Virus record (IMG/VR): IMGVR_UViG_3300033182_000980
Location: 186,001 to 250,000 of that record
Reading direction: 5' to 3' (one strand)
Length of the DNA stretch: 64,000 nucleotides
Both the position numbers and the translations under genes were made by a program. How positions within the stretch are numbered: the stretch's first letter is position 1; every line of letters begins with the position of its first letter. Under the pieces are notes generated by a model. It saw only the letters and a program-made list of their open reading frames with translations, did no database searches and was not told where the DNA came from. This document shows positions 3,530-53,633 of this stretch, one piece after another.

Positions 3530-3904
3530 TTAAGCTCCAAAGAAATCTCTTAAGACCGCATAGGCGTGTTTGCATATTTTGTGCGTACCTTTAGGGTCTT
3601 TCTTAGTGGGTTGTTCTGCTGTACCTCTCACTTTACCGAACAAGTAATCGTTTTGGACTGCATGGTACTCTGGCCCTTGATACTGCCAATAGTTGCAAGT
3701 GCAAGTGAGGTGGAGATCGGGGTTTGATCTCTCTCCCTTAGCTTCAACTGTAACTACATAATCACCTACCTCAAACTCGATAGGCTCTTTAAGTACCTTC
3801 TCCTCAAAGCCATTTACGACAGCTTTGACAGAAGAAGCGTTGGACTTAACTTTAGAGTCGAGTCCATTTGTAATCTGATTAAGATATGCAGATGATCTAC
3901 GCAT
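3530..3904 (-). CDS. SWIM-type zinc-finger protein
   Basis: CTCNYW...ICKH fits CxC...CxH. Confidence 0.7.
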   Translation of the reverse strand: MRRSSAYLNQITNGLDSKVKSNASSVKAVVNGFEEKVLKEPIEFEVGDYVVTVEAKGERSNPDLHLTCTCNYWQYQGPEYHAVQNDYLFGKVRGTAEQPTKKDPKGTHKICKHAYAVLRDFFGA

Positions 3905-3944
3905 GATTTCTAACCTCTCTATTGTTGCTAAGAGAGGCTAGATC

Positions 3945-3959
3945 ATAAATAGACTATTA
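3945..3959 (-). promoter_or_regulatory. Class-L promoter motif overlapping the upstream stop codon, followed by an RBS-occluding hairpin (3909-3942)
   Basis: TAATAGTCTATTTAT; 12-bp stem TCTAGCCTCTCT/AGAGAGGTTAGA with one G-U pair. Confidence 0.65.
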
Positions 3960-4253
3960 CTTAACAGCGACAAACTTAACCTTATCCCCGACTCTTTCCA
4001 TCCGAAAGTTTCCAGGGAATTTGAATGTCTTACCCTTGAGATCAACGATAGCTATTTCAGAGATCGACCCATCGACAATGGCAGATCCTTCTGGAAGAAC
4101 CTCTTGCTTGAGTGAGAAATCTCCATTCATGTGCTTGAAGTTAAATTCACCCCAAACTTGGTTTTCTTGCTCTTGTGTTCGATCATCCCAACCTTCTGGC
4201 TTCGGGTTTAGGATCGCATCAACCATGTCTTTTATCTTAATATCATCGCTCAT
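3957..4253 (-). CDS. Hypothetical protein
   Basis: 98-aa ORF with AAGGA RBS; its stop is embedded in a class-L motif. Confidence 0.6.
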   Translation of the reverse strand: MSDDIKIKDMVDAILNPKPEGWDDRTQEQENQVWGEFNFKHMNGDFSLKQEVLPEGSAIVDGSISEIAIVDLKGKTFKFPGNFRMERVGDKVKFVAVK

Positions 4254-4289
4254 GTGAGTGTCCTTTCATTTGTGCTTTTGCATCATACC

Positions 4290-4333
4290 ATATAGATCAT
4301 TGTAACCCCTTAAATATAGATCATTGTAGCCCA
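4290..4333 (+). repeat. Direct repeat ATATAGATCATTGTA x2 (24-nt period) containing class-E motif GTAACCCCTTA (4302-4312)
   Basis: Exact 15-mers at 4290-4304 and 4314-4328, upstream of the ORF at 4360. Confidence 0.75.
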
Positions 4334-4359
4334 ACTCTCTCCCGAAAGGAGAACCCACC

Positions 4360-4809: not shown

Positions 4810-4823
4810 GGTCGGACGAAAGG

Positions 4824-5202: not shown

Positions 5203-5916
5203 TTAGAAGCGAATGTAGAGTCCTGTGCCATCTTCAAAGCGATCTTTGAGATCCTCTGCATAGACATCGTTGAACTCTTTAACAACCTTTACGCTACGAC
5301 CATGAGTACGAATGAACTCCATGTCATAAAGGTCAAGACCATTAAGGGTGATACGCACTCTGTTCACAGCACCCCTGTGCTTAGGCTTTGGGAACACGAG
5401 TGTAACACCATTAGGCTCATTGATGAGTTGCTTGAGTCCAATCATCATCTGTAGCTTACGACCACCGCCGAGCTGATTAACGATGGTAGCCGCAATCGAA
5501 TTGGCTTGTCTCTCAAGACGAGCAACCTTGACACCTCTAGCTGTGGCAGAGATACCTTTGGAAGCTAACCAGTTCATCACTGCCGTGAAATCACCTCGAT
5601 AATCATTAACTTCCATTAACTCTGCGAAGCCCATGTTTTGATTTGCTTTGGAAATCAAAGCCTTTTTAATCCCTTCTTTTCTGACCTCAACAGATTGGTC
5701 TGGCAATCTACTCTTAGACCACTCTTTCCAACTGACTGGCTTAATTGAACCATCAAATCCTACAAAAGCAAAAAATAAAGTTTCACCTCTTGAAAGGTTT
5801 ACTTTTCTCCCACTTCTTGATGCAATCGTCTTGTATTCAAATGCAGACGCTTGTCTCTCAAGACGAGCAATTCTCATCTCAAGATTTCTAATAATCTCAC
5901 TAGCTGATCTTCTCAT
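5203..5916 (-). CDS. Leader-bearing two-domain protein
   Basis: N-terminal MRRSASEIIRNLEMRIARLERQA and internal VARLERQA. The C-terminal domain (TIVNQLGG...VRITL..LDLYDMEF...VY...L...FE..TGL) resembles a recurring phage domain of unknown function. Confidence 0.75.
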   Translation of the reverse strand: MRRSASEIIRNLEMRIARLERQASAFEYKTIASRSGRKVNLSRGETLFFAFVGFDGSIKPVSWKEWSKSRLPDQSVEVRKEGIKKALISKANQNMGFAELMEVNDYRGDFTAVMNWLASKGISATARGVKVARLERQANSIAATIVNQLGGGRKLQMMIGLKQLINEPNGVTLVFPKPKHRGAVNRVRITLNGLDLYDMEFIRTHGRSVKVVKEFNDVYAEDLKDRFEDGTGLYIRF

Positions 5917-5966
5917 AGGTCATTCTCCATTGGTTAAGGGTTAAAGAGATCACCTATGGAGAACCT

Positions 5967-5981
5967 ATAAAGAGACTACAA
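5967..5981 (-). promoter_or_regulatory. Class-L promoter motif TTGTAGTCTCTTTAT with downstream anti-SD hairpin (5923-5963)
   Basis: Motif match; TTCTCCAT pairs with ATGGAGAA over the RBS of the 5916 gene. Confidence 0.6.
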
Positions 5982-7625: not shown

Positions 7626-8194
7626 CTATTGTCTCCGCTCATCTGCTTAGTGAGAAAGAAAGTTGCTCTGCGTATGGCTTTCATTCTACCCTTCTCAATC
7701 CCTTGCTCAATAAAGTTAAACTTATAGACTGCTGGATGTATCCACTTGTTTTCAGTCCTAAGAGGGAGATTTCTAAATACAACCTCACCACTCTTGGTCT
7801 TAATCGGAACGACTTTCTTCTCCATGTTAGATTTACGAGTGAGCCAGCTCATCTCATAAGGCTCTTTGCGTTCAAGATACTTTTTAACCCATTGCCAATC
7901 AGACTTGAGCTTGATAGCTCCACCTTTAGTGATCTCGTAGTAGAACGAGTCTAAAAACTCTTTTGTGCGTGGAATACCCGTCCCCATTCCTGCCGCTTTC
8001 TTAGCCGACTCCTTAACTGCCTTGACTATTTCTTCACCGAAGATCTCCAAGACCTTTTTAGAGATGTCTTTACCCTTCAGATCAACATTCTGAAACTGAT
8101 TTTTACGCACTCTATAAGTACGAAGATCCCAAGGTCTGTTTGGATCTCTGTTCTTCGGTGGGTTTCTTCTTGCTCGTCTTGGGTCAAACTTCAT
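7622..8194 (-). CDS. Possible neck/tail-completion (HK97 gp10-like) protein (start corrected to MKFDP)
   Basis: AGGAGG RBS before the ATG at 8194; basic protein with VPIK..SG.VVFR...WIHPA...F pattern. Confidence 0.45.
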   Translation of the reverse strand: MKFDPRRARRNPPKNRDPNRPWDLRTYRVRKNQFQNVDLKGKDISKKVLEIFGEEIVKAVKESAKKAAGMGTGIPRTKEFLDSFYYEITKGGAIKLKSDWQWVKKYLERKEPYEMSWLTRKSNMEKKVVPIKTKSGEVVFRNLPLRTENKWIHPAVYKFNFIEQGIEKGRMKAIRRATFFLTKQMSGDNR

Positions 8195-8221
8195 ATCTAT
8201 GCCTCCTACTACAAGTAGCTG

Positions 8222-8255
8222 ATAAACAAAGTACAAGGGTCAATAGTCTTTTTAT
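8222..8255. promoter_or_regulatory. Divergent pair of class-L motifs (8222-8236 minus, 8241-8255 plus)
   Basis: TTGTACTTTGTTTAT on minus and CAATAGTCTTTTTAT on plus, back to back. Confidence 0.6.
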
Positions 8256-9281: not shown

Positions 9282-9608
9282 TCACATACGAGCTTCAAAT
9301 TCCCTACTGCTTTTTCTATATACTTTACCCACCGACATAGTGTCCATTGATTCGTCACTCCATGAATCAAGAGATACTTTAACGGCCTTATTTCCTTTTA
9401 AGGGTACTTCTAAGACGATCTTCCCCCCTCTTGACATTTCAAAAGGTTCAAGGTCAGTATTTACATTTTCGTTAGTTAAAATCGACACTTGATTCTTAAA
9501 AACCCTCATTAGATATGAGTCTTTGAGGTCAACTTTGCTCGCTTGACGCTCTAATCGAGCGATACGAGCTTCAAGATTTCTGATTATTTCTGACGCTGAT
9601 CTTCTCAT
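9282..9608 (-). CDS. Leader-bearing hypothetical protein
   Basis: MRRSASEIIRNLEARIARLERQA; AAGGA RBS. Confidence 0.75.
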   Translation of the reverse strand: MRRSASEIIRNLEARIARLERQASKVDLKDSYLMRVFKNQVSILTNENVNTDLEPFEMSRGGKIVLEVPLKGNKAVKVSLDSWSDESMDTMSVGKVYRKSSREFEARM

Positions 9609-9663
9609 GGTCTGTTCCTTTCATGTAAGAACGATGGTATAAAAAACACATCTAATGTTGACA

Positions 9664-9678
9664 ATAAATAAACTACAA
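9664..9678 (-). promoter_or_regulatory. Class-L promoter motif TTGTAGTTTATTTAT
   Basis: Motif match 56 nt upstream of the ATG at 9608. Confidence 0.5.
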
Positions 9679-10165: not shown

Positions 10166-10648
10166 TTACCCAATCCACCTTGTCAGATCGCCCCAGTCTA
10201 ACCAGACTCTCTTTTTCTTAGGGTCAATTTTGATGCCGAGAGCTGAACCTATACTAGTACGATCTCGCTCATCAAAGTTGAATGGGATGCTTATGGTGTT
10301 TGGTCTACCCCCTCCACCAAACGATGGGAAACCTCTTAGTGCCATAAAGTGTTGAGCACCAGCTTGCTTAAACCATTCATCTGCACCAGTGTGAGTTTGT
10401 ACATACCCATAAACAGTCACTGTTCTGCCATTTTTTGGGTTTTCAAAAGTGACATCCACATTATTAAGGCTTTTTACTTCAACATCGACAACTTCAAATA
10501 GACCTGCATCGGTCTTGTAAAGGAGTCTCTCTAACTCTTGGAGGGTTAGTCTATTGTCCTTAAAGATGTCAAAGATACCTGCTTGCTTTTCAAGCTGTGT
10601 AACTCTTGACTCAAGGTCATGGATGATTTCTGATGCAGTTCTTTTCAT
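10166..10648 (-). CDS. Leader-bearing hypothetical protein
   Basis: MKRTASEIIHDLESRVTQLEKQA. Confidence 0.75.
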   Translation of the reverse strand: MKRTASEIIHDLESRVTQLEKQAGIFDIFKDNRLTLQELERLLYKTDAGLFEVVDVEVKSLNNVDVTFENPKNGRTVTVYGYVQTHTGADEWFKQAGAQHFMALRGFPSFGGGGRPNTISIPFNFDERDRTSIGSALGIKIDPKKKRVWLDWGDLTRWIG

Positions 10649-10691
10649 GGTAGGTTCTCCATAGGTTTGAGTTAATACCTATGGGGAGACA

Positions 10692-10706
10692 ATAAATAGG
10701 TTATTA
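10692..10706 (-). promoter_or_regulatory. Class-L motif over a stop codon, with anti-SD hairpin (10659-10684)
   Basis: TAATAACCTATTTAT; CCATAGGT/ACCTATGG 8-bp stem. Confidence 0.6.
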
Positions 10707-11372
10707 AAATCTGACCCTATACTTTTTGAGGGTCGGGGTCATACCTTTTTCAACGCTCTTAGCAATGGATACAACCTCTTCAGCTAATCTTACATTCTCT
10801 TCTGTCGAGTCGAGTCTCTTTACAAGACTGAGGCTAAGTTCGCTCCCTCCCTTAGACCAGTCATTTAGACGGTCTTGGAAATGATTTTTTAGTTCCACAT
10901 AAAGAGGATCGGGATCATACCCCGTAGCCCCTTGTGTGAATAACTCTATATTCATGGTTAGAGGAGAGTCTTCTTCTTCTCGCAAGTGTAGGAAAAACTG
11001 AGTGTCTTGCGATTGGAAGTGAAGCAGAGTTATCTCATCTTCATCAAGAATGTCATAGTATTGGTAGGGAACATCGCCAAGTTCAATCAACTCTATGACA
11101 GATTTCTCAACTTTGATGGGTGCAACTAAAGAGAATGTCCCTTGAGCTGACATCATCTTGTTATTTTGTTTGAGCTTGAAGTCAGTTATTTGAAACTGAA
11201 CTGTCCCATCAAACATATCTTGAAGCTCACCCTCTAACTCAGAGGACATTTCATCTTGAGTGAGCTTGGAAGGAACTTTGAAGTCATCAATGATGTAGTT
11301 TCTGCTCGCTTGTTTTTCAAGACGAGCGAGCCTACGCTCAAGACCTCGAATGATTTCTGATGCTTTTTTCAT
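10704..11372 (-). CDS. Leader-bearing acidic hypothetical protein
   Basis: MKKASEIIRGLERRLARLEKQA. Confidence 0.75.
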   Translation of the reverse strand: MKKASEIIRGLERRLARLEKQASRNYIIDDFKVPSKLTQDEMSSELEGELQDMFDGTVQFQITDFKLKQNNKMMSAQGTFSLVAPIKVEKSVIELIELGDVPYQYYDILDEDEITLLHFQSQDTQFFLHLREEEDSPLTMNIELFTQGATGYDPDPLYVELKNHFQDRLNDWSKGGSELSLSLVKRLDSTEENVRLAEEVVSIAKSVEKGMTPTLKKYRVRF

Positions 11373-11424
11373 ATTGGCTCTCCATTTGGTTAATACCTAT
11401 GGAGAGCCAATAAAAAAACTATTA
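11373..11424 (-). promoter_or_regulatory. Class-L motif (11410-11424) plus perfect 13-bp anti-SD hairpin abutting the ATG
   Basis: ATTGGCTCTCCAT (11399-11411 on minus) pairs with ATGGAGAGCCAAT (11373-11385), which contains the GGAG RBS. Confidence 0.75.
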
Positions 11425-11775
11425 CTCCTCAGCACCTGCCATGTCAGCAGACCCACCCTCGACTGCCATATCGGTAGTCTCCTCAACTCCACCCTCTGAC
11501 CTTGCGTCTACAGTCATGTCCTCTACACCCATGTCGGTCATGTCTGTACCCGCTTCAACAGTAGCATCCATCTCCATGCCTGCTTCTGTGGTTGAGCCAC
11601 CGTCAGTAGCTCCACCTTCAGCTCCTGCATCAGTTCCTGCATCCATACCACCCTCAGAACCACCCATCTCCATGCCTGCCATATCGCCAGCTACAGGAGT
11701 CTCGGTGGTTTCTTTATCCTTGTCGCAAGCGATAAGGGTAAGAGCAATAACTGCAATGGTAAGTAGATTTCTCAT
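11422..11775 (-). CDS. Predicted lipoprotein with acidic Gly/Met/Asp-rich low-complexity body
   Basis: Signal peptide MRNLLTIAVIALTLIAC with lipobox LIAC. Confidence 0.8.
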   Translation of the reverse strand: MRNLLTIAVIALTLIACDKDKETTETPVAGDMAGMEMGGSEGGMDAGTDAGAEGGATDGGSTTEAGMEMDATVEAGTDMTDMGVEDMTVDARSEGGVEETTDMAVEGGSADMAGAEE

Positions 11776-11777
11776 GG

Positions 11778-11830
11778 TATATACCTTTCGTTGTTAAGTG
11801 TTTGAAAGAAGGTATATAAAGAAACTACAA
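11778..11830 (-). promoter_or_regulatory. Class-L motif (11816-11830) plus 10-bp anti-SD hairpin
   Basis: TTGTAGTTTCTTTAT; TATATACCTT/AAGGTATATA stem. Confidence 0.65.
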
Positions 11831-11857: not shown

Positions 11858-12790
11858 TTATAGGGGCAAGTACCGAGTTCTAGCGTATCGGGCAGACTTG
11901 CTTCCAAAACCAAACCATGACTTGAGTTTACTCACTCCAGTGTTCAAAGCGTCCATCACACCTCGACTTATACTTCTAAATCCACCTAAAAGTTTGTCTT
12001 TAAGCTCTGTAATCTTAACCCCTGTTCGCTGAATAAAGGGTAAGAAATACTTAAAGAAAAAGTTGGCAACTTTAGAGGTAGCCCACCCTAAAACTCTTAG
12101 GGCTAGATAAGCACAAAGCATGATACCCATGACTTTAACTGATCCAAGAGTAATAGCTCCCCACAAAGTCTTGGCAACAGCTCCTCCAGAAGCAAAGACA
12201 GCGATAGCGGCTGCACAAGTATAAACCACGAAAAACATTAGAATCGACCCTAGAGCGTTAAACTCATCTCCAGTATAGTATCGTTTCCCCCCCAAATTGA
12301 GGTGAGCACCCTCAATCGGAGTTCCCTTTTGCTGGAATAATTGTTCTTCGATTTGTTTATGACCCTTATAGAGCCAAGCATAAAAACCTATGGGGTCGTC
12401 CGAGTTATGTCGCTTAATACATTCATCAATGTAGGCATACTTAGCCTTGATTGAGTTTCTGCGATCAATCTCCTCTTTGATCTTTTGGATCTGAGGATTC
12501 TTATCATTGATGATCTTGTCCATGTTCTTATAGGCATTCATAATATCTCTTGGTGAGTTAATGCCAGCCTTCTTCATAGCAATCACAAAACTGCTTGGGA
12601 CATCCTCAAGTTCATTATCAAGCCCTTCTGCAAGCCCAACGAAAGCTGTTTCGATAGTAGCTTTCTCGACCTTATCTGCTTGGTTTGAAGTCTTGATGAC
12701 TCGACCAAGATTGTTGATGTAGGCTTGTTTTTCAAGGCTTGCGACTCGGATCTCAAGATCACGAATATATTGGTGTGCTGTCTTTCTCAT
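11858..12790 (-). CDS. Leader-bearing protein with a C-terminal hydrophobic hairpin (start corrected to MRKTAH)
   Basis: GGAGA RBS before the ATG at 12790; MRKTAHQYIRDLEIRVASLEKQA; two long hydrophobic Gly/Ala-rich segments. Confidence 0.7.
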   Translation of the reverse strand: MRKTAHQYIRDLEIRVASLEKQAYINNLGRVIKTSNQADKVEKATIETAFVGLAEGLDNELEDVPSSFVIAMKKAGINSPRDIMNAYKNMDKIINDKNPQIQKIKEEIDRRNSIKAKYAYIDECIKRHNSDDPIGFYAWLYKGHKQIEEQLFQQKGTPIEGAHLNLGGKRYYTGDEFNALGSILMFFVVYTCAAAIAVFASGGAVAKTLWGAITLGSVKVMGIMLCAYLALRVLGWATSKVANFFFKYFLPFIQRTGVKITELKDKLLGGFRSISRGVMDALNTGVSKLKSWFGFGSKSARYARTRYLPL

Positions 12791-12839
12791 GTTCTTTTCT
12801 CCATAGGTAGAATTAAGGTAAGGACACATATCTCAGAAT

Positions 12840-12854
12840 ATAAAGAGCCTATAA
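12840..12854 (-). promoter_or_regulatory. Class-L motif variant TTATAGGCTCTTTAT
   Basis: Motif match 50 nt upstream of 12790. Confidence 0.45.
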
Positions 12855-12901
12855 ATGTTTTAGACTCTTTATATTTCTCCTTAGCAAAAACTGAGGTGAT
12901 T

Positions 12902-13585
12902 ATGAGACTTGTTTGTATTTCAGACACCCACAATCAGCATGATGAACTTGATTTACCCGATGGAGATGTCCTAATCCACGCAGGGGATTGGACAGGCACA
13001 GGTACGCAGAAGCAAGTGATCTCATTTATAAGGTGGTTTGCGAGCCAACCCCATAAGCATAAGATACTGATTGCAGGAAACCATGAAGTGACTCTCGATA
13101 AGTCATTCTATCAGATCAACTGGCCTAGATTTCATCCGAAGCAACCCCACAGATCACATGACATAGCTAACTATGTGTTGAGGGAAGAGGGCATCTACTA
13201 TCTTGAGGACACAGAAGTGGTCATAGAGGGTGTTAAGTTTTATGGTAGCCCTTGTCAGCCCTCATTTGGTGGTTGGGCTTTTAATGTGGATAGAGGCTTA
13301 CCAATCCGAGCTGTGTGGGGCAATATACCAGAAGATACTGATGTGTTGATCACACATGGACCGCCATATGGGTATGGAGATAAGTTAGCCATTGGAGAGC
13401 GTGTGGGCTGTAAGGATTTACTCGATGAGATCACTACAAGGGTACGCCCTAAAGTCCATGTATATGGTCATATCCATGAGGGTTATGGCACATATGACTT
13501 AGAGGGTATTAAGCTCATTAATCCTGCGAACTGTAATGAGGACTACAAGATTACTAATAAGCCTATCGTGTATGACTTAGAATAG
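12902..13585 (+). CDS. Calcineurin-like metallophosphoesterase (MPPED-like)
   Basis: ISDTH, HAGD, AGNHE, LITHGPP, GHIHE motifs; start set at MRLVCISD. Confidence 0.92.
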   Translation: MRLVCISDTHNQHDELDLPDGDVLIHAGDWTGTGTQKQVISFIRWFASQPHKHKILIAGNHEVTLDKSFYQINWPRFHPKQPHRSHDIANYVLREEGIYYLEDTEVVIEGVKFYGSPCQPSFGGWAFNVDRGLPIRAVWGNIPEDTDVLITHGPPYGYGDKLAIGERVGCKDLLDEITTRVRPKVHVYGHIHEGYGTYDLEGIKLINPANCNEDYKITNKPIVYDLE

Positions 13586-14152
13586 ATCTTCAGACCAAAC
13601 GATGTACTTGTCTCGCATGAACTCGATATAGGCTTTTGCTCTAGGGTTTCGAGCGAGTCTGATCGCTTTTTCAAAGTCTCCACCCCAAAGAGCTTCAAAC
13701 TTGTCCGACAGACCGTCATCATATTCTGGATCAATCTTAGACAGCCCATCAATATGATCAAGGAGGAAGTCCTCGAACCTCATCTTAGCTACTCTTTTAG
13801 CACTGCTCTGTTTACTAGTGGATGGGAAAGGGGTCGGGTTATATTTAGATGCCATATCGACCATCTCCCTATCCTCATGTGTGAGTCGTTGCCTGTACCA
13901 ATCGCTACCCATAGAGATGAGAGCATAGTTAGTACGATCTAAGGAACGCTCTAACTTTGATAAGTGTCTTGGTAGAGCTTCAAAGTTATCCCCACAACGC
14001 TTGTATATTTCCTCAGCGATTTCTGGACTTTCTTTGATCGCCTCGATCATCTGGTTCATGTGTGTACGAACAATGTGAGCTTCAACTCTCGCAGAGGACA
14101 CCCCTTGAGATAAAATAGACCAAGATGCTTGGCTTGAAGATTTCTTTTTCAT
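13577..14152 (-). CDS. Hypothetical protein
   Basis: AAGGAG RBS; class-L motif upstream; internal AKRVAK leader-like site. Confidence 0.65.
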   Translation of the reverse strand: MKKKSSSQASWSILSQGVSSARVEAHIVRTHMNQMIEAIKESPEIAEEIYKRCGDNFEALPRHLSKLERSLDRTNYALISMGSDWYRQRLTHEDREMVDMASKYNPTPFPSTSKQSSAKRVAKMRFEDFLLDHIDGLSKIDPEYDDGLSDKFEALWGGDFEKAIRLARNPRAKAYIEFMRDKYIVWSEDLF

Positions 14153-14188
14153 TACTATTCTCCTTGTCTCTTGGTCTAAGGCAATATG

Positions 14189-14203
14189 ATAGAAAAACTA
14201 TTA
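14189..14203 (-). promoter_or_regulatory. Class-L motif over a stop codon
   Basis: TAATAGTTTTTCTAT, 37 nt upstream of 14152. Confidence 0.55.
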
Positions 14204-17723: not shown

Positions 17724-19304
17724 TCACCACTCCAAATCGTCAATGATGTCATCGTGATGAGCTAGACGGCTTAGTGCGTCTAAGCCACCACTAGAAGGCT
17801 TCTTTGCAGGTCCAAGACTATCAAGTGCGGATAATCCACCACCAGATCCCCCTGTGTTCTTTTGAACACGAGCTGGATCAATTCCTTTGGAAGTCATTGC
17901 ACCTTCGTACTTAGCCCACTCTTTCCCAAAGTTTTTTTTCTGGGCTTCATAGGAATCTTTTACTTCTTTTGCACTATTGTGCTTGTGGCTTTTGACCCTA
18001 GACTCTTTGTCGAAGTCAGCCGTGATGCCCATATCATCAATGATGTCATCTGCAAACTTAAAGGTATAACCTTCCTCTTCGCCATGTGGGTGATCATCAC
18101 GATAACCACGATAACGAGCTACATCGTTCATAGCGGAGTGTGCGTGAGAAATCTTATCTTCAACCCAGTCGTCAAGGTCGTCCATGCCGATGTCATCAAC
18201 GATGAAATCCGCCATGTCGCTGATCTCTCGTAGGTTCTGTCGGCTCATGTATGATCCGGACTCTTCATGGTCTTTAGCCATACGGCTAGAACCTTTAGGG
18301 ACAGAGCCAATAAGGTCTTCAATGTTTTTTAAGGCATATTCTAAAGTCGGGAGAACTTCATTTTCCATGACTCTATAAACATAACGCTCATTGCCTTCGT
18401 CAGCCAATCCACGATCAATCATAGAGGTGATCTCATGGTTTGCTTCTTTAATTGCCTCTTGGAAACTTTCAAAAGCTCCAGACACCTCTTCATGGTATGG
18501 AGCAAACAAAGGATGTCCATCTACATCTACGAAAAGTTCACCCCAACTGTTTTGGCTTTTAATCAGAGCTGATTCTACAGCATTCATATCTTCAACAGCA
18601 TCGGAGAGATCATCAAGAGTTATTTTACTTAATAATCTGTCAATATGAGATACAGAATTCACTAGTCGTTTCTTTAAAGATGAACTGATCTCACGATCTG
18701 ATAGATCACCTGCTATACGACCAAGACCAAGGTCATCAATGATCTCGTAATGTGCAGTTTTACCCGCATCTTCTACGATCTCTTCTTTGTCCTCTTTGAT
18801 GTCCTCAAGTTTCTCTTCAAGCTCTTTTTGCTCGGAGTCTAACTCTTGGAAGTCCTCGGAACTCATCGCCTTAGCTCTGTTCTTAACGACATCCTTGTTG
18901 ATCTCGGTCTGCTCATCAAAGGTTTCAGCGGCATCGGGGTTGTCTTTCTTCCACTGCTCAAACTCTTTCTTACCTTTAGGTCCAGAATGAAAACGAGACT
19001 CTTTCCAGAAATCAGACATACGATCAAGACCGATGTCATCTACAATCTCGAAGCCCTCAAGCTCCTCGGCTTCAAAGTCATCCGAGAGAAAGTCAGCTTC
19101 AAAGTCATCTGCGATCACTTCATCTTTGACATTACCTGGACCACCTCTTAATGGCTCGATCCCCATATTTACTTGGACGACATTCTCACCCAAGAAATCA
19201 GCGGCGTTTCTCTCACCATAGTCGGGCTGTAGTCGAAGGGGTTGCTGTGGGTATCGAATCTCCATGTGCTTCTGTGCGATTTTTTTAGCTAGTCTTTTAA
19301 GCAT
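17724..19304 (-). CDS. Acidic, repeat-rich putative head core/scaffold-like protein
   Basis: Repeated [IV][IV]DD[ILM]G units next to KTA/RIA/RMA/KFA/RLA sites; SYMSRQNL...LDDWVEDKISHA domain. Confidence 0.5.
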   Translation of the reverse strand: MLKRLAKKIAQKHMEIRYPQQPLRLQPDYGERNAADFLGENVVQVNMGIEPLRGGPGNVKDEVIADDFEADFLSDDFEAEELEGFEIVDDIGLDRMSDFWKESRFHSGPKGKKEFEQWKKDNPDAAETFDEQTEINKDVVKNRAKAMSSEDFQELDSEQKELEEKLEDIKEDKEEIVEDAGKTAHYEIIDDLGLGRIAGDLSDREISSSLKKRLVNSVSHIDRLLSKITLDDLSDAVEDMNAVESALIKSQNSWGELFVDVDGHPLFAPYHEEVSGAFESFQEAIKEANHEITSMIDRGLADEGNERYVYRVMENEVLPTLEYALKNIEDLIGSVPKGSSRMAKDHEESGSYMSRQNLREISDMADFIVDDIGMDDLDDWVEDKISHAHSAMNDVARYRGYRDDHPHGEEEGYTFKFADDIIDDMGITADFDKESRVKSHKHNSAKEVKDSYEAQKKNFGKEWAKYEGAMTSKGIDPARVQKNTGGSGGGLSALDSLGPAKKPSSGGLDALSRLAHHDDIIDDLEW

Positions 19305-19342
19305 TTCAGATCTCCTTTAGATTGTTCATTTAATCTCTAGCA

Positions 19343-19357
19343 ATAGATAAACTATTA
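19343..19357 (-). promoter_or_regulatory. Class-L motif over a stop codon
   Basis: TAATAGTTTATCTAT, 39 nt upstream of 19304. Confidence 0.55.
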
Positions 19358-21273: not shown

Positions 21274-22512
21274 TTATAGAACGGGGCTACCGAATAATGC
21301 TTTGGTGTGTCTGCCGATAGATCCCAATGACCTACTGTAGTAGCCATCACCTTCAAGGATGATGTCTCCTTTACCACCCATAATAGCCATGATCGTATCT
21401 GGATTCTTTATGTTGTCTAACCCTCCCCTTCTTAGGATTTCTTCAACCTTGTCAGACGCTTCTGTGTAGTATCCTCTCTGTTTGAGGAGCTTGAGCATCT
21501 TAACTATGACTGCCTTTTTGGACTTCCTTGTTCCATCATGCCCCATAGCCGCGATCTTCTTACCGAATGGTGTGTCTTTCATGGCAATGAAGATGTCAAT
21601 ATCTGGATCATCATCGTTGTCAATGACCTCGAAGATCGGGTACTTTTTGATTAGCTCCTCTTTAGACCCTATGTGCTTGCCGATAGCTCCATAAGCAATG
21701 TCATATAGAGTCCAAAGATCTCCCTCTTGCTCGGAGTCGAATCGGTTATTCTTTGTCTCTAACCATTTATCCTTCTCCAAAACGACTCTAGCAAGTCTCT
21801 CTGCCATGCGTTCTCTGCGTAAGTCTTTCTTATGCTTCTCTTTACGAGATCGACCCTTAGCGACATCTTTATCCCTATTCTTGTGCTTGCCTTTACCAGA
21901 ACTGCCGACACCTGTACCATCGAACATTCCTTGTGCGTTAGGATCACGATACTTAGGGATCGAGGGTTCTTGGTTTTTCTTCTTTTTGCTTGCCATGATC
22001 TGGCGACCATTCTCACAGACCTCACGCTCAATCATAAGAGCGGGTCTGCGTACAAGATAGTTCGGCCATTTCTCGAACCACTTAGAGTAGAAATCATCTT
22101 CGGAGACTTCACGAGTGGTCTTGTCGGGGTTAGGCATATTGGGGTCAGCTACATGAACAACATAGCTTCCCTTTTCACCAGTCACATCAAAGATTAAGCT
22201 CGCATGACTCCAATCCCTACCTTCTGGATTCCAAGCGATGAGGACAGGCTTACCTTGATCAGTCCATGATTTTACTTGGGTGAGTGTAGCTGGTGTAGTG
22301 AGTGTAGCTCTGCAACCAAAGTATTGAGCACAGGCTAATACCTCTTCCCATCTCGCACCTTGCATGGGTTTCGCACCAATAACTTGATTGACTTGATCTT
22401 CGTTGCATTTAACCCCTACAGCATTGAGTGCCATACAGGTGGAGGTTGCAACGCAACTAAACTGTGACCGCTGTCGTATTGGGTTCACATCAGCTTTTGC
22501 TAATCTTCTCAT
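21274..22512 (-). CDS. C39-like cysteine peptidase with a conserved C-terminal alpha/beta domain
   Basis: RQRSQFSCVATS (Q...C), SHASL (H), VADPN (D). Confidence 0.75.
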   Translation of the reverse strand: MRRLAKADVNPIRQRSQFSCVATSTCMALNAVGVKCNEDQVNQVIGAKPMQGARWEEVLACAQYFGCRATLTTPATLTQVKSWTDQGKPVLIAWNPEGRDWSHASLIFDVTGEKGSYVVHVADPNMPNPDKTTREVSEDDFYSKWFEKWPNYLVRRPALMIEREVCENGRQIMASKKKKNQEPSIPKYRDPNAQGMFDGTGVGSSGKGKHKNRDKDVAKGRSRKEKHKKDLRRERMAERLARVVLEKDKWLETKNNRFDSEQEGDLWTLYDIAYGAIGKHIGSKEELIKKYPIFEVIDNDDDPDIDIFIAMKDTPFGKKIAAMGHDGTRKSKKAVIVKMLKLLKQRGYYTEASDKVEEILRRGGLDNIKNPDTIMAIMGGKGDIILEGDGYYSRSLGSIGRHTKALFGSPVL

Positions 22513-22513
22513 A

Positions 22514-22565
22514 ATAGGTAGCCCTTTCTATTGTTAGGAAAGAGCCACCTATAAAGAGATTACAA
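22514..22565 (-). promoter_or_regulatory. Class-L motif (22551-22565) plus 15-bp anti-SD hairpin
   Basis: ATAGGTGGCTCTTTC pairs with GAAAGGGCTACCTAT (two G-U pairs) just before the ATG at 22512. Confidence 0.72.
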
Positions 22566-25013: not shown

Positions 25014-25531
25014 TACGCTTTACCTCCATTCTCTAGCTCACCTTTTTGCTTTTTGTCTTGTAGGACTTGTTTAACCGCCTTTGCCTGTTCTTTTTTAGAG
25101 AGGTGTCTTTCAACGACTCTCTCTACAAGATCTTTTTTCACCTCTACTTTGGTCTTATCTTTGGTGATAGGCTTGGCTTTAGGGATCTCTTCGTGGCTGG
25201 TAGGCACACCTTCGATCTTTTCTTCAGTCTTAACGATAAACTGATTGAGTGTACTCAACTCTTTGCCGCCTGGCTTCTTAATGATTTCTTCGGGAGGGGG
25301 AGGGGCAATGACAGCTTCGCTTTCTATGAGCGTGTCATCTTTCTTCATCTCACCTGACTGGATGGCTTTTTCAACAGTATCTACTTTGTTAGTGATCGCC
25401 TTTGACTCGGCAAGATTTCTAACAGACCTCTTGGTTGGATTATCGAAAAAAGCAGACTCGGCTGATTGTGCTTGTTCCAGCTCTGCTACTCGCCTCATTA
25501 GTGAGGCTATTCTATATCTAAGATCATTCAT
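25013..25531 (-). CDS. Hypothetical protein with a leader-like N-terminus
   Basis: MNDLRYRIASLMRRVAELEQA; AGGAG RBS; class-L motif upstream. Confidence 0.6.
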   Translation of the reverse strand: MNDLRYRIASLMRRVAELEQAQSAESAFFDNPTKRSVRNLAESKAITNKVDTVEKAIQSGEMKKDDTLIESEAVIAPPPPEEIIKKPGGKELSTLNQFIVKTEEKIEGVPTSHEEIPKAKPITKDKTKVEVKKDLVERVVERHLSKKEQAKAVKQVLQDKKQKGELENGGKA

Positions 25532-25566
25532 ACTAAACTCCTATCGGGTCTAGTGTAAGCAACCTT

Positions 25567-25581
25567 ATAAATAAACTATTA
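25567..25581 (-). promoter_or_regulatory. Class-L motif over a stop codon
   Basis: TAATAGTTTATTTAT, 36 nt upstream of 25531. Confidence 0.6.
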
Positions 25582-27620: not shown

Positions 27621-27838
27621 AGTCTTTTGTGCCTCTGCTTATATGACTTTAGGTCAAAGCCTTCATCTCTTAGGGTTCGCCTAATCTTCTCAAGAGCCTT
27701 AGCTACAACCCGATCACCTTTAGGGTAGTAATCTCCATTGGCTTCAAGCCATGCAGAGACTCGGCTCTTGTCTTTAAAGGAGCAAATGACCACCCTAGCT
27801 AACTCGCTAGACTCGTGGCTGATCTGTTCGGCTGTCAT
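27617..27838 (-). CDS. Small hypothetical protein
   Basis: 73-aa ORF coupled (ATGA) to the upstream gene. Confidence 0.55.
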   Translation of the reverse strand: MTAEQISHESSELARVVICSFKDKSRVSAWLEANGDYYPKGDRVVAKALEKIRRTLRDEGFDLKSYKQRHKRL

Positions 27839-28143
27839 ACACCAACCATCCTGTACTCAACAGCCTCACCGCACTTAGGACACTTACCATCTGGTGTAGG
27901 CTCACCTCCATCATGGAACTGATGCCATTGACAGATGTGAGGCTCAACCGACTTGATGTGCTTACAAGGGCTTTTATCGTAGTCCTCTCCCTTCTGATAG
28001 AAGAAGGCCGGACAAGTACAAGTCCATACTCCAAGACGCTCTAAGAGCTGTACCTTGTAGGCCTTACCTTTGCTTCCCTGTACCTCATAGGTCTTAAAGG
28101 GAGCTTGGCATTGTGCGTATGGGTGGTAAGTTAAGTCGGGCAT
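27835..28143 (-). CDS. SWIM zinc-finger protein with a C-terminal zinc ribbon
   Basis: V.GSKG..Y.V...WTCTCP...CKH plus C..H...CPKCG; AAAGGAG RBS. Confidence 0.8.
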   Translation of the reverse strand: MPDLTYHPYAQCQAPFKTYEVQGSKGKAYKVQLLERLGVWTCTCPAFFYQKGEDYDKSPCKHIKSVEPHICQWHQFHDGGEPTPDGKCPKCGEAVEYRMVGV

Positions 28144-28180
28144 TGGTGTTCTCCTTTAAGGATTATTATATGACAGAGAC

Positions 28181-28801: not shown

Positions 28802-28846
28802 CTTGTCTCCCTTTCGTGGAGTGGTTGATTGATGCTTTGTAATAGA

Positions 28847-28857
28847 TAAGGGGTTAC
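28847..28857 (-). promoter_or_regulatory. Class-E motif GTAACCCCTTA
   Basis: Exact 11-mer, 46 nt upstream of 28801. Confidence 0.65.
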
Positions 28858-28909
28858 GCTTTACCTAACGACTCGACAGAGAGCTTTCGGACAGCGAACC
28901 TAAGTTTTT

Positions 28910-29089
28910 TTATCCGAGATCGTGTGCGAGGTCATTCGCCTCAATCTCTGCGTGGATCTCCTCGTGGTCAAAGATGACCACACGCTCTGCTTTGAGCTTG
29001 GCTCGCATCTCTTTGACGGTGTAGACCTCATTGAGATGGAAGAGAAAGAGTCGGCAGAGTGCATTGATCTCGTTCATTGTGTATGTCAT
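28910..29089 (-). CDS. 59-aa hypothetical protein (below the ORF-track cutoff)
   Basis: MTYTMNEINALCRLFLFHLNEVYTVKEMRAKLKAERVVIFDHEEIHAEIEANDLAHDLG; AAAGGAG RBS; class-E motif upstream. Confidence 0.7.
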   Translation of the reverse strand: MTYTMNEINALCRLFLFHLNEVYTVKEMRAKLKAERVVIFDHEEIHAEIEANDLAHDLG

Positions 29090-29152
29090 GTGTGTCTCCT
29101 TTGGGAGTTGAGGTTGGGGTTGGTCATCAGCCCCTCGATACTATGGTATAAA

Positions 29153-29226
29153 TAAGGGGTTACCGATTAGCTTTTGTGAGCCAAATCAAACACTTACGCA
29201 AGTTTGTGGTGGGTCGTAACCCCTTA
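29153..29226. promoter_or_regulatory. Divergent pair of class-E motifs (29153-29163 minus; 29216-29226 plus)
   Basis: Two exact GTAACCCCTTA 11-mers pointing outward. Confidence 0.65.
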
Positions 29227-52600: not shown

Positions 52601-52921
52601 GTTGCGAACATCAATAACCATCCCATTAACCATTGCTTTGAATGGGTTAATGACGAAGCTGTTTGCAGTAAAGTTTGGATTTAGATTAGGTGGGTCTGCA
52701 TCATCATAAGGATCTTCAAAAGAGAATGACCCAATAGACTCATCTTGCCCTTGATAAGAAATCATGCCACTAGGGAGCGTGTTCTTCTTATTGAGGATGT
52801 CTTGGGTAAGATTAAGTTCACTATCAAGCATGGGTCTTCCAGCTTGATATACGACACTATCCCACGCATAGTTTGTGGGGTTGAGATCCCGACTTGTAGA
52901 GGGTAGGTATTTTTGAGACAT
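49667..52921 (-). CDS. Tail/baseplate structural protein, paralogue of 37306..42630
   Basis: VVYQAGRPMLDSELN, DFVFLEVW, RIQVQYR, YAIPIC...RRN, RPDGLFADQI. Confidence 0.7.
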   Translation of the reverse strand: MSQKYLPSTSRDLNPTNYAWDSVVYQAGRPMLDSELNLTQDILNKKNTLPSGMISYQGQDESIGSFSFEDPYDDADPPNLNPNFTANSFVINPFKAMVNGMVIDVRNTDATDGTNKITLAVPDVGAGPGTRGDFVFLEVWRREVTPAMQSKSRVKIISAQPNDTFKFTKGVNPTPPPANNTITLTVGVDFQKGVTPAETARNMAQAINDYDGANLGLTVDGVTTFAETRGTEYLFLNHNGGASGNHVGTDPNSFTLVSSNTAGIRILNQPAGGSDGEGKPNANKVYFAGNVLSDPTTHLDDNIQDPNVNVSSTRRIQVQYRLRMDGISTDLSQEIFGFESNTVLAQGSQGGAVAGYPFERHDTDTGLWYAGDGSEAAAQDLGTVDGYVYAIPICYVFRRNANDGANGFNPIGSFNTGALHDHNGTTLGANNYVDNVSVGHSDRPDGLFADQISEYDVLDLRRRVYPRGLDFSAELDYQYHSLLDDTNRTWFARADNLQTTGNGSGGVSHTPLVCDVYGRNEPANIGGAGQWRQNFDHIARRWSNEPTTERIYITAKPSNTPNQPSTGISVSHAGGTGDYWYEGDQITIDLTTLDISGHLGWASNSGDTLPADDNTILPKLIDIGYCWHNDGHFVNAIEQQVRIQSITGLGSNQVVITLDANPGVLVNGGIIGAGDYLLVGDADGQSTNSDKEIFIELIFDYSSIDRGLSGTVAEAPIPDRSGYPTGSAVLTELAPTNAYDPYPGQGNGNAPPISNVIPNTKEVSLEYVYAQQTIQLVSSSPTSSYLPWRLYYNADLAPTITDRSNAGTNLTLDNANTNYQHAESKIGWNVDSGPAWNSGQRLIEISAYPLEPYPDAPTDSTIFVSYRRHAPKTVGSDFAITVPDVGVNAGGVIPDELNLQPLVIGKEIGAYLKTGEHYPFFNPTDQLATHHNASNYEEYQTLSSPEVILDDLKINTGSINLPSFVPFVSSVNVALGDTNVGQPPLKDNESRAYYPTMEDASYFPSAFAKNMGGIHSNYKTALPCLMRVVDDNHTLYRKGEVVLVVFVKTNEWGQGVAVDMRENLADNYVAACVYRTRNQLLLGE

Positions 52922-52933
52922 CTTTCACACCCC

Positions 52934-53575
52934 TTAAAAGGTCAATCGCCAAGTGATTGCTAAGATAGCTCCACTTGGTTTATTGATGACAGGGAATGTG
53001 AGGTAGTTTACGAGGATGTCGCTACCTGTGATGTCAGTGGTTAAATCACGAGAGGGGAATACATCAGCGAGCTGACTGAACTCTGCTGATCCTCCCGACA
53101 CACCCGAAACGGTACACATCAGGCCCATCTCTGTTAACGCACCCACAGCATCTGCCGACTCAAATGTGGTTGTAAAGTCAACGATGTTTGTAGGCACATT
53201 AGCTAGGCTACCATCGGAGTTTCGATACACAACGCTCGTAAATGTTTTTCTGAACAAAGGCACATTGATCTTGCGTTGTCTGTAGTCAGCAATGTCGGGG
53301 CTTGCAGAAGAACCCGAAGCACCTGTTCCAACAGCGAGCATATCAACGCCACGAGCGAATCCAGCCCCTAAGTTTCTTGAGAACAGAATCGCCGCTAAGA
53401 TACCACCGTCAAGCGTATAGACATTGGACTTGTCTAAAACGATTTCTTCTCGTCCGTCCTCATATTGAAGGACTCCAAAGACATCACCTTTAACTTTGAT
53501 TCCGAGATTATCTTCAAAGCCAAGTCCGAAGTTTACAGCAGTTGTCTTAGGTGGTGGGATTTTTGTAGAGATCAT
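52934..53575 (-). CDS. Tail-collar/fibre-attachment-like baseplate protein
   Basis: LAVGTG...LFRK...DFTTTF...LTEMGL...TFPVINK...ITW.LTF; start set at MISTK, where GGAGG serves as RBS. Confidence 0.65.
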   Translation of the reverse strand: MISTKIPPPKTTAVNFGLGFEDNLGIKVKGDVFGVLQYEDGREEIVLDKSNVYTLDGGILAAILFSRNLGAGFARGVDMLAVGTGASGSSASPDIADYRQRKINVPLFRKTFTSVVYRNSDGSLANVPTNIVDFTTTFESADAVGALTEMGLMCTVSGVSGGSAEFSQLADVFPSRDLTTDITGSDILVNYLTFPVINKPSGAILAITWRLTF

Positions 53576-53580
53576 ATTTT

Positions 53581-53633
53581 CCTCCATTTGAAGATATGGG
53601 GCTGATAATGGAGGGTTATTTAAGACTTACAAA
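53581..53633 (-). promoter_or_regulatory. Anti-SD hairpin (CCTCCATT/AATGGAGG) with a degenerate class-L-like motif upstream
   Basis: 8-bp inverted repeat 53581-53588/53607-53614 covers GGAGG. Confidence 0.45.

What the first reader, a model, noticed from the sequence alone, without database searches (positions are those of the whole stretch)
3902..53633. Promoter plus anti-Shine-Dalgarno hairpin cassette gating many late genes
Seen: right after the class-L motif an inverted repeat begins whose 3' arm covers the RBS and reaches or nearly reaches the ATG. Cases: perfect 13 bp at 11373-11411; 15 bp with two G-U at 22514-22552; 12 bp at 3909-3942; 10 bp at 11778-11818; 8-bp cores at 5923-5963, 10659-10684 and 53581-53614. 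The leaders of 5916, 10648 and 11372 share CTC(C)CCATAGGT, and these genes encode leader-tagged proteins. Known: T4 e, soc and I-TevI are silenced on read-through transcripts by RBS-sequestering hairpins, which a late promoter inside the hairpin truncates. Inference: initiation about 6-9 nt after TTTAT removes part of the 5' arm, so these genes translate only from their own late promoter. Promoter + hairpin + leader would then form a reusable plug-in module.
Basis: partly seen in the sequence, partly recalled or inferred. Interest (0 to 1): 0.75.

Follow-up and report, generated by a model that had tools for sequence, protein, structure and literature searches.

The report
Promoter-embedded hairpins masking ribosome-binding sites
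In an uncultured 376-kb marine phage, many tandemly arranged structural genes sit behind one abundant promoter motif followed by a conserved hairpin that would hide their ribosome-binding site on read-through RNA but probably not on their own RNA: a trick known from a few T4 genes, used here genome-wide.

Summary
All seven cited inverted repeats fold as described (MFE -5.9 to -25.3 kcal/mol; z -2.2 to -7.5). The "class-L" motif TTWRTAGTTTNTTTAT occurs about 120 times in the 375,691-bp genome, nearly always 25-58 nt before an SD plus ATG.

In 20 of 82 analysed leaders, the 20 nt after TTTAT pair strongly and gene-specifically with that gene's own translation start region (13% at or below -18 kcal/mol, against 0.6% with permuted partners).

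- Orthologues at 42-93% protein identity keep the hairpin with different arm sequences.
- Strong hairpins occur only where the upstream gene is co-directional (20/52 against 0/30). This trend replicates in a 312-kb relative.
- They are absent from the two other promoter classes.

The transcription start could not be mapped. That start would restore ribosome-site accessibility to baseline.

The best reading is a T4 e/soc/I-TevI-type device in which translation depends on the gene's own promoter. It is used at scale, and mostly between neighbouring L units rather than only early-to-late. A role as a 3' structure for the upstream mRNA is not excluded. The "plug-in module" idea holds only for a 27-gene family with a shared N-terminal tag.

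The parts
3902..3959 (-). L cassette with strong hairpin. Motif 3945-3959; 5' arm 3931-3947; 3' arm 3902-3920, covering the SD and ATG (3904). Gene 3530-3904 (124 aa).
   Evidence: (MFE -20.7, z -5.3). Orthologues L141 and L145 keep the hairpin, with a G-U to G-C change.
5912..5981 (-). L cassette with strong hairpin. Motif 5967-5981; 5' arm 5952-5971; 3' arm 5912-5934; ATG 5916. Tag-family gene 5203-5916.
   Evidence: (MFE -21.1, z -3.8). Orthologue L147 keeps a 10-bp GGTTCTCCAT/ATGGAGAACC stem.
10646..10706 (-). L cassette with medium hairpin. Motif 10692-10706; 5' arm 10677-10687; 3' arm 10656-10666, covering the SD; ATG 10648. Tag-family gene.
   Evidence: (MFE -12.0, z -2.2).
11370..11424 (-). 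L cassette with the strongest hairpin in the window. Motif 11410-11424, whose first three bases TAA are the stop codon of upstream gene 11422-11775. 14 perfect pairs from the AT of TTTAT to 1 nt before ATG 11372.
   Evidence: MFE -25.3, z -7.5; opening cost 18.7 kcal on read-through RNA, 2.3 if the start is at +11.
11773..11830 (-). L cassette with a weak A/U-rich 10-bp hairpin. Motif 11816-11830; arms 11809-11818 and 11778-11787; ATG 11775.
   Evidence: (MFE -7.7, z -2.5).
22510..22565 (-). L cassette with strong hairpin. Motif 22551-22565; 5' arm 22538-22552; 3' arm 22514-22528; ATG 22512. Gene 21274-22512 (412 aa).
   Evidence: (MFE -21.0, z -5.4). Orthologues L003, L004, L007, L009, L013 and L017 keep the hairpin with different arms.
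25519..25581 (-). Motif 25567-25581; the helix reaches over ATG 25531. It is the first L unit downstream of the E and M3 promoters at 27.6-29.2 kb.
   Evidence: (duplex -12.8, MFE -16.2).
53585..53633 (-). Variant motif (TTGTAAGTCTTAAATA, not found by the weight matrix) with a 7-bp CCTCCAT/ATGGAGG stem; ATG 53587.
   Evidence: MFE -5.9, z -2.35. This is the weakest of the cited cases.
2317..2379 (-). L cassette without a hairpin that sequesters the start region.
8194..8236 (-). L cassette without hairpin; the upstream neighbour is on the other strand.
9608..9678 (-). L cassette without hairpin; the upstream neighbour is on the other strand.
12790..12854 (-). L cassette without strong hairpin (gene 11858-12790).
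12858..12906 (+). L cassette on the plus strand, back to back with the one at 12854. Moderate helix; ATG 12902.
14152..14203 (-). L cassette (TCTAT variant) without hairpin.
19304..19357 (-). L cassette without hairpin, although the upstream gene is co-directional.
54370..54431 (-). L cassette without hairpin.
27639..29163 (-). Other promoter classes at the head of the same minus-strand array. E-type GTAACCCCTTAT at 28846-28857 and 29152-29163. M3-type TCATATAA at 28166-28173 and 27639-27646. They point leftwards into the L cassettes.
   Evidence: No terminator-like sites at the cassettes in the scanned stretch 3500-23000.

Best explanation
TTWRTAGTTTNTTTAT is the recognition element of the phage's most abundant promoter class, which drives mostly virion and structural genes. 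Where such a promoter follows a co-directional gene, the non-conserved stretch from the AT of TTTAT to about +13 has evolved to be complementary to that gene's own SD and/or AUG.

RNA that reads through from upstream contains both arms. On that RNA the translation start region is locked in a 10-19-bp helix.

RNA started at the gene's own promoter is inferred to begin about 10-12 nt after TTTAT. It lacks the 5' arm and is open to ribosomes.

Translation of each such gene therefore depends on firing of its own promoter. This is the mechanism shown for T4 e, soc, 49 and I-TevI.

Shown here: the hairpins, their specificity, their conservation by compensatory change, their restriction to read-through contexts, and their restriction to class L. 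Inferred: promoter function, the transcription start position, and the effect on translation.
For: - The hairpins exceed shuffles and permuted-partner controls.
- The stem runs from position -2..+1 relative to the end of TTTAT to 0-3 nt before the ATG, or over the ATG.
- Orthologues of two genes keep the hairpin with other sequences. Own arm against own start region: -19.5 and -23.0 kcal/mol. Swapped between orthologues: -11.0 and -14.2. 5'-arm identity is only 0.36 and 0.54.
- Strong hairpins occur in 20 of 52 cassettes behind a co-directional gene and 0 of 30 behind an opposite-strand neighbour (Fisher p=2.7e-5).
- That contrast holds outside the tag family (10/32 against 0/23) and inside it (10/20 against 0/7).
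- In relative G001 the continuous measure replicates (-9.0 against -5.1, p=2.6e-4); the count of strong hairpins there was too small to test (5/34 against 1/23, Fisher p=0.38).
- Promoter classes E and M3 show no pairing above control (p=0.42 and 0.33).
- The predicted cost to open positions -13..+4 in the 20 strong cases is 15.5 kcal/mol on read-through RNA, 6.8 for a start at +7 and 4.3 for a start at +11. That equals the 4.1 of the other 62.
- Start-site clues, also present in hairpin-less and divergent cassettes: a TA peak at +10/+11 (48 of 82, replicated in G001) and a G-poor pyrimidine tract at +3..+9. The SD never begins before +15.
- No terminator-like sites lie at the junctions. In 25 of 52 co-directional cases the upstream stop codon lies inside the motif, so read-through is expected.
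- The T4 precedent is described in PMC3014915.
- Some of these genes, such as the baseplate wedge, should be essential. They must therefore be translated from some RNA that lacks the helix.
Against: - No transcription start, RNA structure or translation measurement exists for this phage. The only RNA data were sparse short contigs of relatives.
- A at +1 after TTTAT (56%) is also a plausible start, and it would put the whole hairpin into the gene's own RNA.
- In several long-arm cases (22512, 3904) the nearest TA is at +15 and there is no purine at +7..+14.
- For 16 of 20 strong hairpins the nearest upstream promoter is of the same class, so simple early-to-late gating does not explain them.
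- 32 of 52 co-directional cassettes have no strong hairpin.
- Gene calls were made with a crude home-made caller, and all energies are predictions.
- No RNA polymerase or sigma factor could be tied to the motif.
Confidence: 0.55

Rival explanations
1. The hairpin mainly serves the upstream gene. It would be a 3' structure just after that gene's stop codon that protects the upstream late mRNA from 3' exonucleases, or that marks a processing or pause site. Overlap with the next gene's start region would be a by-product of tight packing, made tolerable because the next gene's own RNA starts inside the hairpin.
For: This also explains why hairpins occur only behind co-directional genes. The hairpin begins about 12 nt after the upstream stop codon, which often lies inside the motif. 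In 16 of 20 cases the upstream unit is itself L-driven.
Against: - There is no U-tract after any cited stem, and none was scored as terminator-like.
- In tag-family paralogues the 5' arm pairs either with the SD (CTCCAT/ATGGAG) or with the AUG and first codons (TCTCATAAGT/ACTTATGAGA). These are two solutions that share only the start region as target.
- Co-directional junctions ahead of E and M3 promoters lack such hairpins.
- No phage RNase III was found.
- This reading does not exclude the main explanation; both could hold.
Confidence: 0.2
2. L transcripts start at or next to the end of TTTAT, so the hairpin is the 5'-terminal structure of the gene's own mRNA. It would stabilise the RNA, or hold it translationally silent until a phage factor or a change of conditions opens it.
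For: The stem starts at -2..+1 relative to the end of TTTAT. T(-1)A(+1) at that point fits the pyrimidine-purine start rule. From my own knowledge, promoters of several phage-encoded polymerases are conserved right up to +1.
Against: - It does not explain why strong hairpins are absent from all 30 cassettes without a co-directional upstream gene, nor the replication of that trend in G001.
- It does not explain the TA peak at +10/+11 or the pyrimidine tract in hairpin-less leaders.
- A helix with 13-16 kcal/mol opening cost over the SD and AUG would nearly abolish translation of structural genes.
- No activator is known, and no phage RNA polymerase was detected by Pfam. The T7-type search was uninformative.
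Confidence: 0.1
3. Translational coupling. The hairpin would keep the downstream start region closed until a ribosome finishing the upstream gene melts it, tying the two yields together, as in RNA-phage and ribosomal-protein operons.
For: The context is co-directional and tightly spaced, and the start region is sequestered.
Against: The stop codon sits at motif positions 1-6, 9-13 nt before the first paired base and about 45 nt before the ATG. By my own estimate of the ribosome footprint, a terminating ribosome would reach at most the foot of a 13-19-bp helix. Coupling also gives no reason for each gene to have its own strong promoter.
Confidence: 0.07
4. The motif is not a promoter but an RNA processing signal, an AU-rich cleavage site next to a stem-loop. 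Alternatively, the repeats act in DNA as operators or cruciforms.
For: The motif is AU-rich and is followed by a stem-loop, as RNase E sites often are (my own knowledge).
Against: - About 120 copies sit at a fixed 25-58 nt before an SD plus ATG, including 30 at divergent junctions where the opposite gene's start lies only 11-17 nt away. That leaves no room for another promoter.
- Arm sequences differ from gene to gene, which excludes a common operator.
- Loops of 4-22 nt and arms anchored on the SD and ATG point to RNA, not DNA.
Confidence: 0.05

Closest known systems
T4 genes e, soc, 49 and I-TevI, and Aeh1 mobE: hairpins that sequester the ribosome-binding site, with a late promoter in the DNA encoding the 5' strand (PMC3014915)
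   Same: A hairpin covers the SD and/or AUG. A promoter lies immediately upstream of or within the 5'-arm coding DNA. Long upstream transcripts would be silent and the gene's own transcripts open. Related phages keep the structure.
   Different: - The promoter motif is unrelated to TATAAATA.
- No gp55-type factor was identified.
- The device is used at 20 or more genes per genome (about 40% of tandem L units) rather than a handful.
- The upstream transcription unit is usually of the same promoter class.
- The start site and the effect on translation are unmeasured here.
T4 middle promoters (MotA box plus -10 element)
   Same: A long, phage-specific upstream box with a second, weaker positional element about 10 nt downstream.
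   Different: The E. coli -10 matrix is not enriched (z -3.2) and -7T is not conserved. A start about 7 nt after such a '-10' would cut off the SD in short leaders. I rejected this architecture.
Hairpin-gated translational coupling in RNA phages (MS2, Qbeta) and bacterial operons
   Same: The start region is closed by long-range or local pairing, and expression depends on an upstream event.
   Different: Here each gene has its own promoter, and the stop codon lies outside the helix. The opening event is inferred to be transcription initiation, not an upstream ribosome.
5'-terminal stabilising stem-loops (ompA-type) and RNase III sites of T7 and lambda
   Same: A stable stem-loop in an intergenic leader.
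   Different: Those structures leave the start region free or are cleaved. These cover the SD and AUG, depend on context, have stems shorter than typical RNase III substrates, and no phage RNase III was found.

Membership tests
T4-type promoter-embedded hairpin that sequesters the ribosome-binding site (e, soc, 49, I-TevI) | A helix includes the SD and/or start codon of the regulated gene | tested here: met
   The 3' arm covers the SD and ends 0-3 nt before the ATG or runs over it. Opening cost is 15.5 kcal/mol against a baseline of 4.1.
T4-type promoter-embedded hairpin that sequesters the ribosome-binding site (e, soc, 49, I-TevI) | The gene's own promoter starts RNA inside or after the 5' arm, so its own transcripts lack the helix | tested here: inconclusive
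   The motif abuts the 5' arm. TA peak at +10/+11, pyrimidine tract, and SD at +15 or later. A start at +11 restores accessibility. No start site was mapped.
T4-type promoter-embedded hairpin that sequesters the ribosome-binding site (e, soc, 49, I-TevI) | Longer transcripts from upstream promoters run through the gene | tested here: inconclusive
   Indirect only. Strong hairpins are confined to co-directional junctions. There are no terminator-like sites. Stop codons lie inside the motif. No transcript data exist.
T4-type promoter-embedded hairpin that sequesters the ribosome-binding site (e, soc, 49, I-TevI) | The structure is conserved in related phages | tested here: met
   Hairpins are kept at 42-93% protein identity with different arms.
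T4 late promoter (TATAAATA, gp55/gp33/clamp) | TATAAATA at -10 | tested here: not met
   The motif is TTWRTAGTTTNTTTAT. gp55 and gp33 homologues were not searched for.
Sigma-70 consensus promoter | TTGACA-N17-TATAAT-like hexamers | tested here: not met
   26 sites against 32 +/- 5.5 in shuffles; the -10 matrix downstream of the motif scores below shuffles.
Intrinsic terminator | G+C-rich stem followed by a U-tract | tested here: not met
   none of the cassettes was listed. The stems are followed by ATG and coding sequence.
Known structured RNA families (riboswitch, thermometer, leader) | Match to an Rfam model at gathering score | tested here: not met
   no match in the 64-kb window.
N4-type hairpin promoter | Short DNA hairpin (5-7 bp stem, 3-nt loop) upstream of the start, with a shared sequence (my own knowledge) | tested here: not met
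   Stems are 8-19 bp, loops 4-22 nt, and arms are gene-specific and anchored on the SD and ATG.

The most novel reading that the evidence does not exclude
A whole clade of uncultured marine huge phages may use 'one promoter, one cistron' translational insulation. In tandem arrays of late transcription units, the pyrimidine-rich stretch between a clade-specific promoter box and the start site doubles as an anti-start-region arm. A gene would then be translated only from RNA initiated at its own promoter, even when the read-through RNA comes from a neighbouring promoter of the same class. That would set protein ratios by promoter strength alone. The promoter class may be read by a so-far unassigned phage factor, such as the conserved protein with two sigma-region-4-like domains.
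Probability: 0.35. Interest if true: 0.65.

Novelty: new member of a known kind. Interest (0 to 1): 0.5.

Why it matters
If confirmed, a regulatory trick known from four or five T4 genes would be a general design rule in a large, uncultured phage lineage. Promoter spacers would encode anti-ribosome-site arms, and dozens of genes would be uncoupled from read-through transcription in genomes that have almost no terminators.

It also gives a purely sequence-based way to place transcription starts and to recognise promoter classes in uncultivated phages. The context rule (hairpin only behind co-directional genes) is a clean, falsifiable prediction. For annotation, it warns that transcript presence in metatranscriptomes need not mean translation for these genes.

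Tried and rejected
1. RNA evidence. Two run searches and the one read-laying run (45) gave only a few 150-350-nt contigs of relatives from four seawater metatranscriptomes. They carry no 5'-end information.
2. 'Upstream box plus -10 hexamer at +10, start at about +22' (T4-middle-like). Rejected because the E. coli -10 matrix is not enriched, -7T is not conserved, and in short leaders the SD begins at +15..+18.
3. De novo EM motif search downstream of TTTAT gave only a vague CTCTTAA-like motif.
4. A search for leaderless genes with ATG at +9..+13, as a start-site marker, found nothing convincing.
5. Relatives of the 222-aa gene 10704-11372: none found.
6. MAFFT alignment of orthologous leaders (A1) was too poor for the count of structure pairs because whole arms are replaced. 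I used an own-against-swapped arm test instead.
7. The exact core TAGTTTNTTTAT is rare in relatives. Their motif is a looser variant, so I fetched and re-analysed one whole relative.
8. Polymerase and factor searches in the genome:
   - No Pfam multisubunit RNAP.
   - The T7-type search was uninformative because its controls did not ring.
   - No sigma region 2.
   - One protein with a sigma-region-4 domain. Its model matches only region-4 domains, weakly, and it cannot be tied to the L motif.
   - No RNase III and no DnaN-type clamp.
9. PHROGs and Pfam left most L-driven proteins unnamed.
10. The nearest records in the phage collection are an uncultured 485-kb phage (33% identity) and Bacillus phage G. 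No cultured relative with mapped promoters exists.
Full report
**Source and setting.** The window is bases 186,001-250,000 of a single 375,691-bp IMG/VR virus record, GC 0.449, rated complete by CheckV. Marine, seawater and wetland metagenomes hold it. It has no near relative among deposited phages. The best hits of its Baseplate_J protein are an uncultured 485-kb phage at 33% identity and Bacillus phage G. All cited cassettes lie on the minus strand.

**The observation.** I folded each cited leader from TTTAT to just past the ATG.

| Gene | Pairs | MFE (kcal/mol) | z |
|---|---|---|---|
| 11372 | 14 perfect | -25.3 | -7.5 |
| 22512 | 15 | -21.0 | -5.4 |
| 3904 | 12+5 | -20.7 | -5.3 |
| 5916 | not counted | -21.1 | -3.8 |
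| 11775 | 10, A/U-rich | -7.7 | -2.5 |
| 10648 | not counted | -12.0 | -2.2 |
| 53587 | 7, behind a motif variant | -5.9 | -2.35 |

In every case the 3' arm holds the SD and stops 0-3 nt before the ATG or runs over it.

**The motif.** There are about 120 genome-wide hits, 96 with a downstream ORF. The distance from TTTAT to the ATG is mostly 25-58 nt, and an SD is almost always present. Thirty of the 82 analysed copies stand at divergent junctions where the opposite gene's start is only 11-17 nt away. I therefore take the motif to be a promoter. That is an inference.

L-driven genes that could be named are:
- a baseplate wedge protein and a tail lysozyme or hub protein;
- a 2084-aa protein with an Mtd_N domain;
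- the genes next to Baseplate_J.

A weak motif variant also precedes an RNR small subunit. 'Late' is plausible but not shown.

**More than chance, and gene-specific.** For the 82 leaders, the 20 nt after TTTAT pair with the gene's own start region (-18..+14) better than with the start regions of other L genes. The mean is -9.7 against -7.1 kcal/mol. Values at or below -12 occur in 24% against 7%, and at or below -18 in 13% against 0.6% (p=1e-4). About a quarter of L cassettes therefore carry a strong, gene-specific helix. In the strong cases the stem begins at the AT of TTTAT or the next base.

**Conservation.** Thirty-nine relatives of the 412-aa gene (22512) and 18 of the baseplate-wedge gene just right of the window were fetched. 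Orthologues with an L-like motif keep a hairpin in the same register, but with other arm sequences. Examples are L007, L013, L097 and L099. An orthologue's own arm against its own start region gives -19.5 and -23.0 kcal/mol. Arms swapped between orthologues give -11.0 and -14.2. The 5' arms are only 36% and 54% identical. Orthologues of the 3904 and 5916 genes behave similarly, with one G-U to G-C change and one weakened case. This is compensatory evolution of a structure.

**The context rule.** Strong hairpins (duplex at or below -12) occur in 20 of 52 cassettes whose upstream neighbour is co-directional. They occur in 0 of 30 whose neighbour is on the other strand (Fisher p=2.7e-5). The rule holds outside the paralogous tag family (10/32 against 0/23) and inside it (10/20 against 0/7).

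I fetched one whole relative, G001 (312,136 bp, GC 0.384), and repeated the analysis on its 57 L instances.
- Own arm against permuted partners: -7.4 against -6.0 (p=0.024).
- Co-directional against opposite-strand context: -9.0 against -5.1 (p=2.6e-4).
- The count of strong hairpins was too small there to test on its own (5/34 against 1/23, Fisher p=0.38).

**Controls with other promoter classes.** The genome has two other abundant upstream motifs: GTAACCCCTTAT(CTATAG) and TCATATAA. Neither shows arm-to-start-region pairing above control, and neither shows a context effect. No terminator-like site coincides with a cassette. In 25 of 52 co-directional cases the upstream stop codon is part of the motif, as TAA or TGA at positions 1-3 or TAG at positions 4-6. 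Read-through into these cassettes is therefore expected, and the hairpin is tied to it.

**Where transcription starts.** This is the decisive unknown. RNA data gave nothing. Three sequence features, present also in hairpin-less and divergent cassettes, point to a start about 10-12 nt after TTTAT.
- A sharp positional peak of TA at +10/+11. It is seen in 48 of 82 leaders, and in 60 of 82 within +9..+12 against 27% expected. It is replicated in G001.
- A G-poor pyrimidine tract at +3..+9.
- The SD never begins before +15.

A geometry in which TAT plus the next three bases acts as a -10-like element, with a 7-8-nt gap to the start, fits. This is my inference.

I considered a start at about +22 and rejected it. 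The predicted cost of opening -13..+4 in the 20 strong cases is:

| RNA form | Opening cost (kcal/mol) |
|---|---|
| Read-through RNA | 15.5 |
| Start at -2 | 13.5 |
| Start at +7 | 6.8 |
| Start at +11 | 4.3 |
| Baseline, the other 62 leaders | 4.1 |

A start at the end of TTTAT cannot be excluded from sequence alone. It would leave essential structural genes closed, and it does not explain the context rule.

**Mechanism and rivals.** The best-supported reading is the T4 e/soc/49/I-TevI device (PMC3014915). The helix silences the gene on RNA coming from upstream, and the gene's own promoter starts inside or beyond the 5' arm.

- For 16 of the 20 strong hairpins the nearest upstream same-strand promoter is another L promoter. 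The device mostly insulates neighbouring units of one class. Early-type promoters do head the window's minus-strand array at 27.6-29.2 kb, and they could also read through.
- The 'plug-in module' exists only for a family of 27 genes. These share the L promoter, a conserved leader (CAT-W-R-GTGATC, TAACCCTTAACC, ATGGAGAA) and a 25-residue N-terminal tag, while their C-terminal parts are unrelated. Elsewhere the arms are private to each gene.

The main rival is that the hairpin is a 3' structure for the upstream mRNA. It explains the context rule equally well. It fits less well with the two alternative pairing targets within the start region (SD or AUG), with the lack of U-tracts, and with the absence of hairpins ahead of E and M3 promoters. 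The two readings are compatible.

**Verdict.** The kind of mechanism is known, but its scale, its promoter and its use between units of one class are new. The key step, the start site, remains untested.

Noticed in passing
window 5203-5916, 9282-9608, 10166-10648, 10704-11372, 11858-12790; 27 genes genome-wide: A family of 27 genes shares a 25-residue N-terminal tag (MRRSASEIIRNLEMRIARLERQA...). Their C-terminal parts are unrelated: only one pair is similar beyond residue 28. The ARLE/RLEK motif resembles the LxE cleavage sites of T4-type prohead proteases (my own knowledge). These may be head-targeted internal or injected proteins.
   Followed up: partly
genome-wide, about 50 copies; in window at 28846-28857 and 29152-29163 (promoter sense on the minus strand): A second abundant motif, GTAACCCCTTATCTATAG, is followed by CTAGTGT, often by a G+C-rich local stem-loop, and then by SD and ATG. 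It is clustered at 335-362 kb and looks like an early promoter class with a 5' stem-loop that does not touch the start region.
   Followed up: partly
genome-wide, about 55 copies; in window at 28166-28173 and 27639-27646 (minus strand): A third motif, TCATATAA, lies 26-66 nt before ATGs and is often directly preceded by GTAACCCCTTAA. It is -10-like and also stands before tRNA-like sequences at about 176.5-177.6 kb of the genome.
   Followed up: partly
tag-family leaders, e.g. window 5940-5960 (minus strand): These leaders keep GGTGATC or AGTGATC at +12..+19 and TAACCCTTAACC in the loop. Both blocks are conserved across most tag-family leaders in the alignment. GGTGATC is complementary to the 3' end of 16S rRNA beyond the core anti-SD (my own knowledge), so it may be a standby or second SD at the 5' end of the gene's own transcript.
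   Followed up: no
genome 42,275-42,841 (minus strand; L040:1195-1761), outside the window: A conserved 188-aa protein (48-95% identity across the clade, including Tara samples) has two helix-turn-helix domains. The first passes Pfam Sigma70_r4. The model (pLDDT 83) matches only sigma region-4 (-35-binding) domains. It sits next to a KOW-motif protein and a protein with a clamp-loader lid domain, and is a candidate promoter-specificity factor.
   Followed up: partly
co-directional L cassettes, e.g. window 11422-11424: In 25 of 52 cases the upstream gene's stop codon is built into the promoter motif: TAA or TGA at positions 1-3, or TAG at positions 4-6 of TAATAG or TGATAG.
   Followed up: yes
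window 37306-63406 (minus strand): A run of giant ORFs (1774, 2060, 1084, 1902 and 1089 aa) has no Pfam match except Baseplate_J in the last. Elsewhere, two L-driven giants both begin MAVRR. One, of 2176 aa, has weak DEAD/SNF2 helicase motifs. The other, of 2084 aa, has an Mtd_N (tropism determinant) N-terminal domain.
   Followed up: partly
genome 110,867 (+), 2,723 (-), and window 8241 (+): High-scoring L motifs (22.1, 17.7 and 16.6 bits) have no recognisable SD, ATG or ORF downstream. They may drive non-coding transcripts, or gene starts may have been missed.
   Followed up: no
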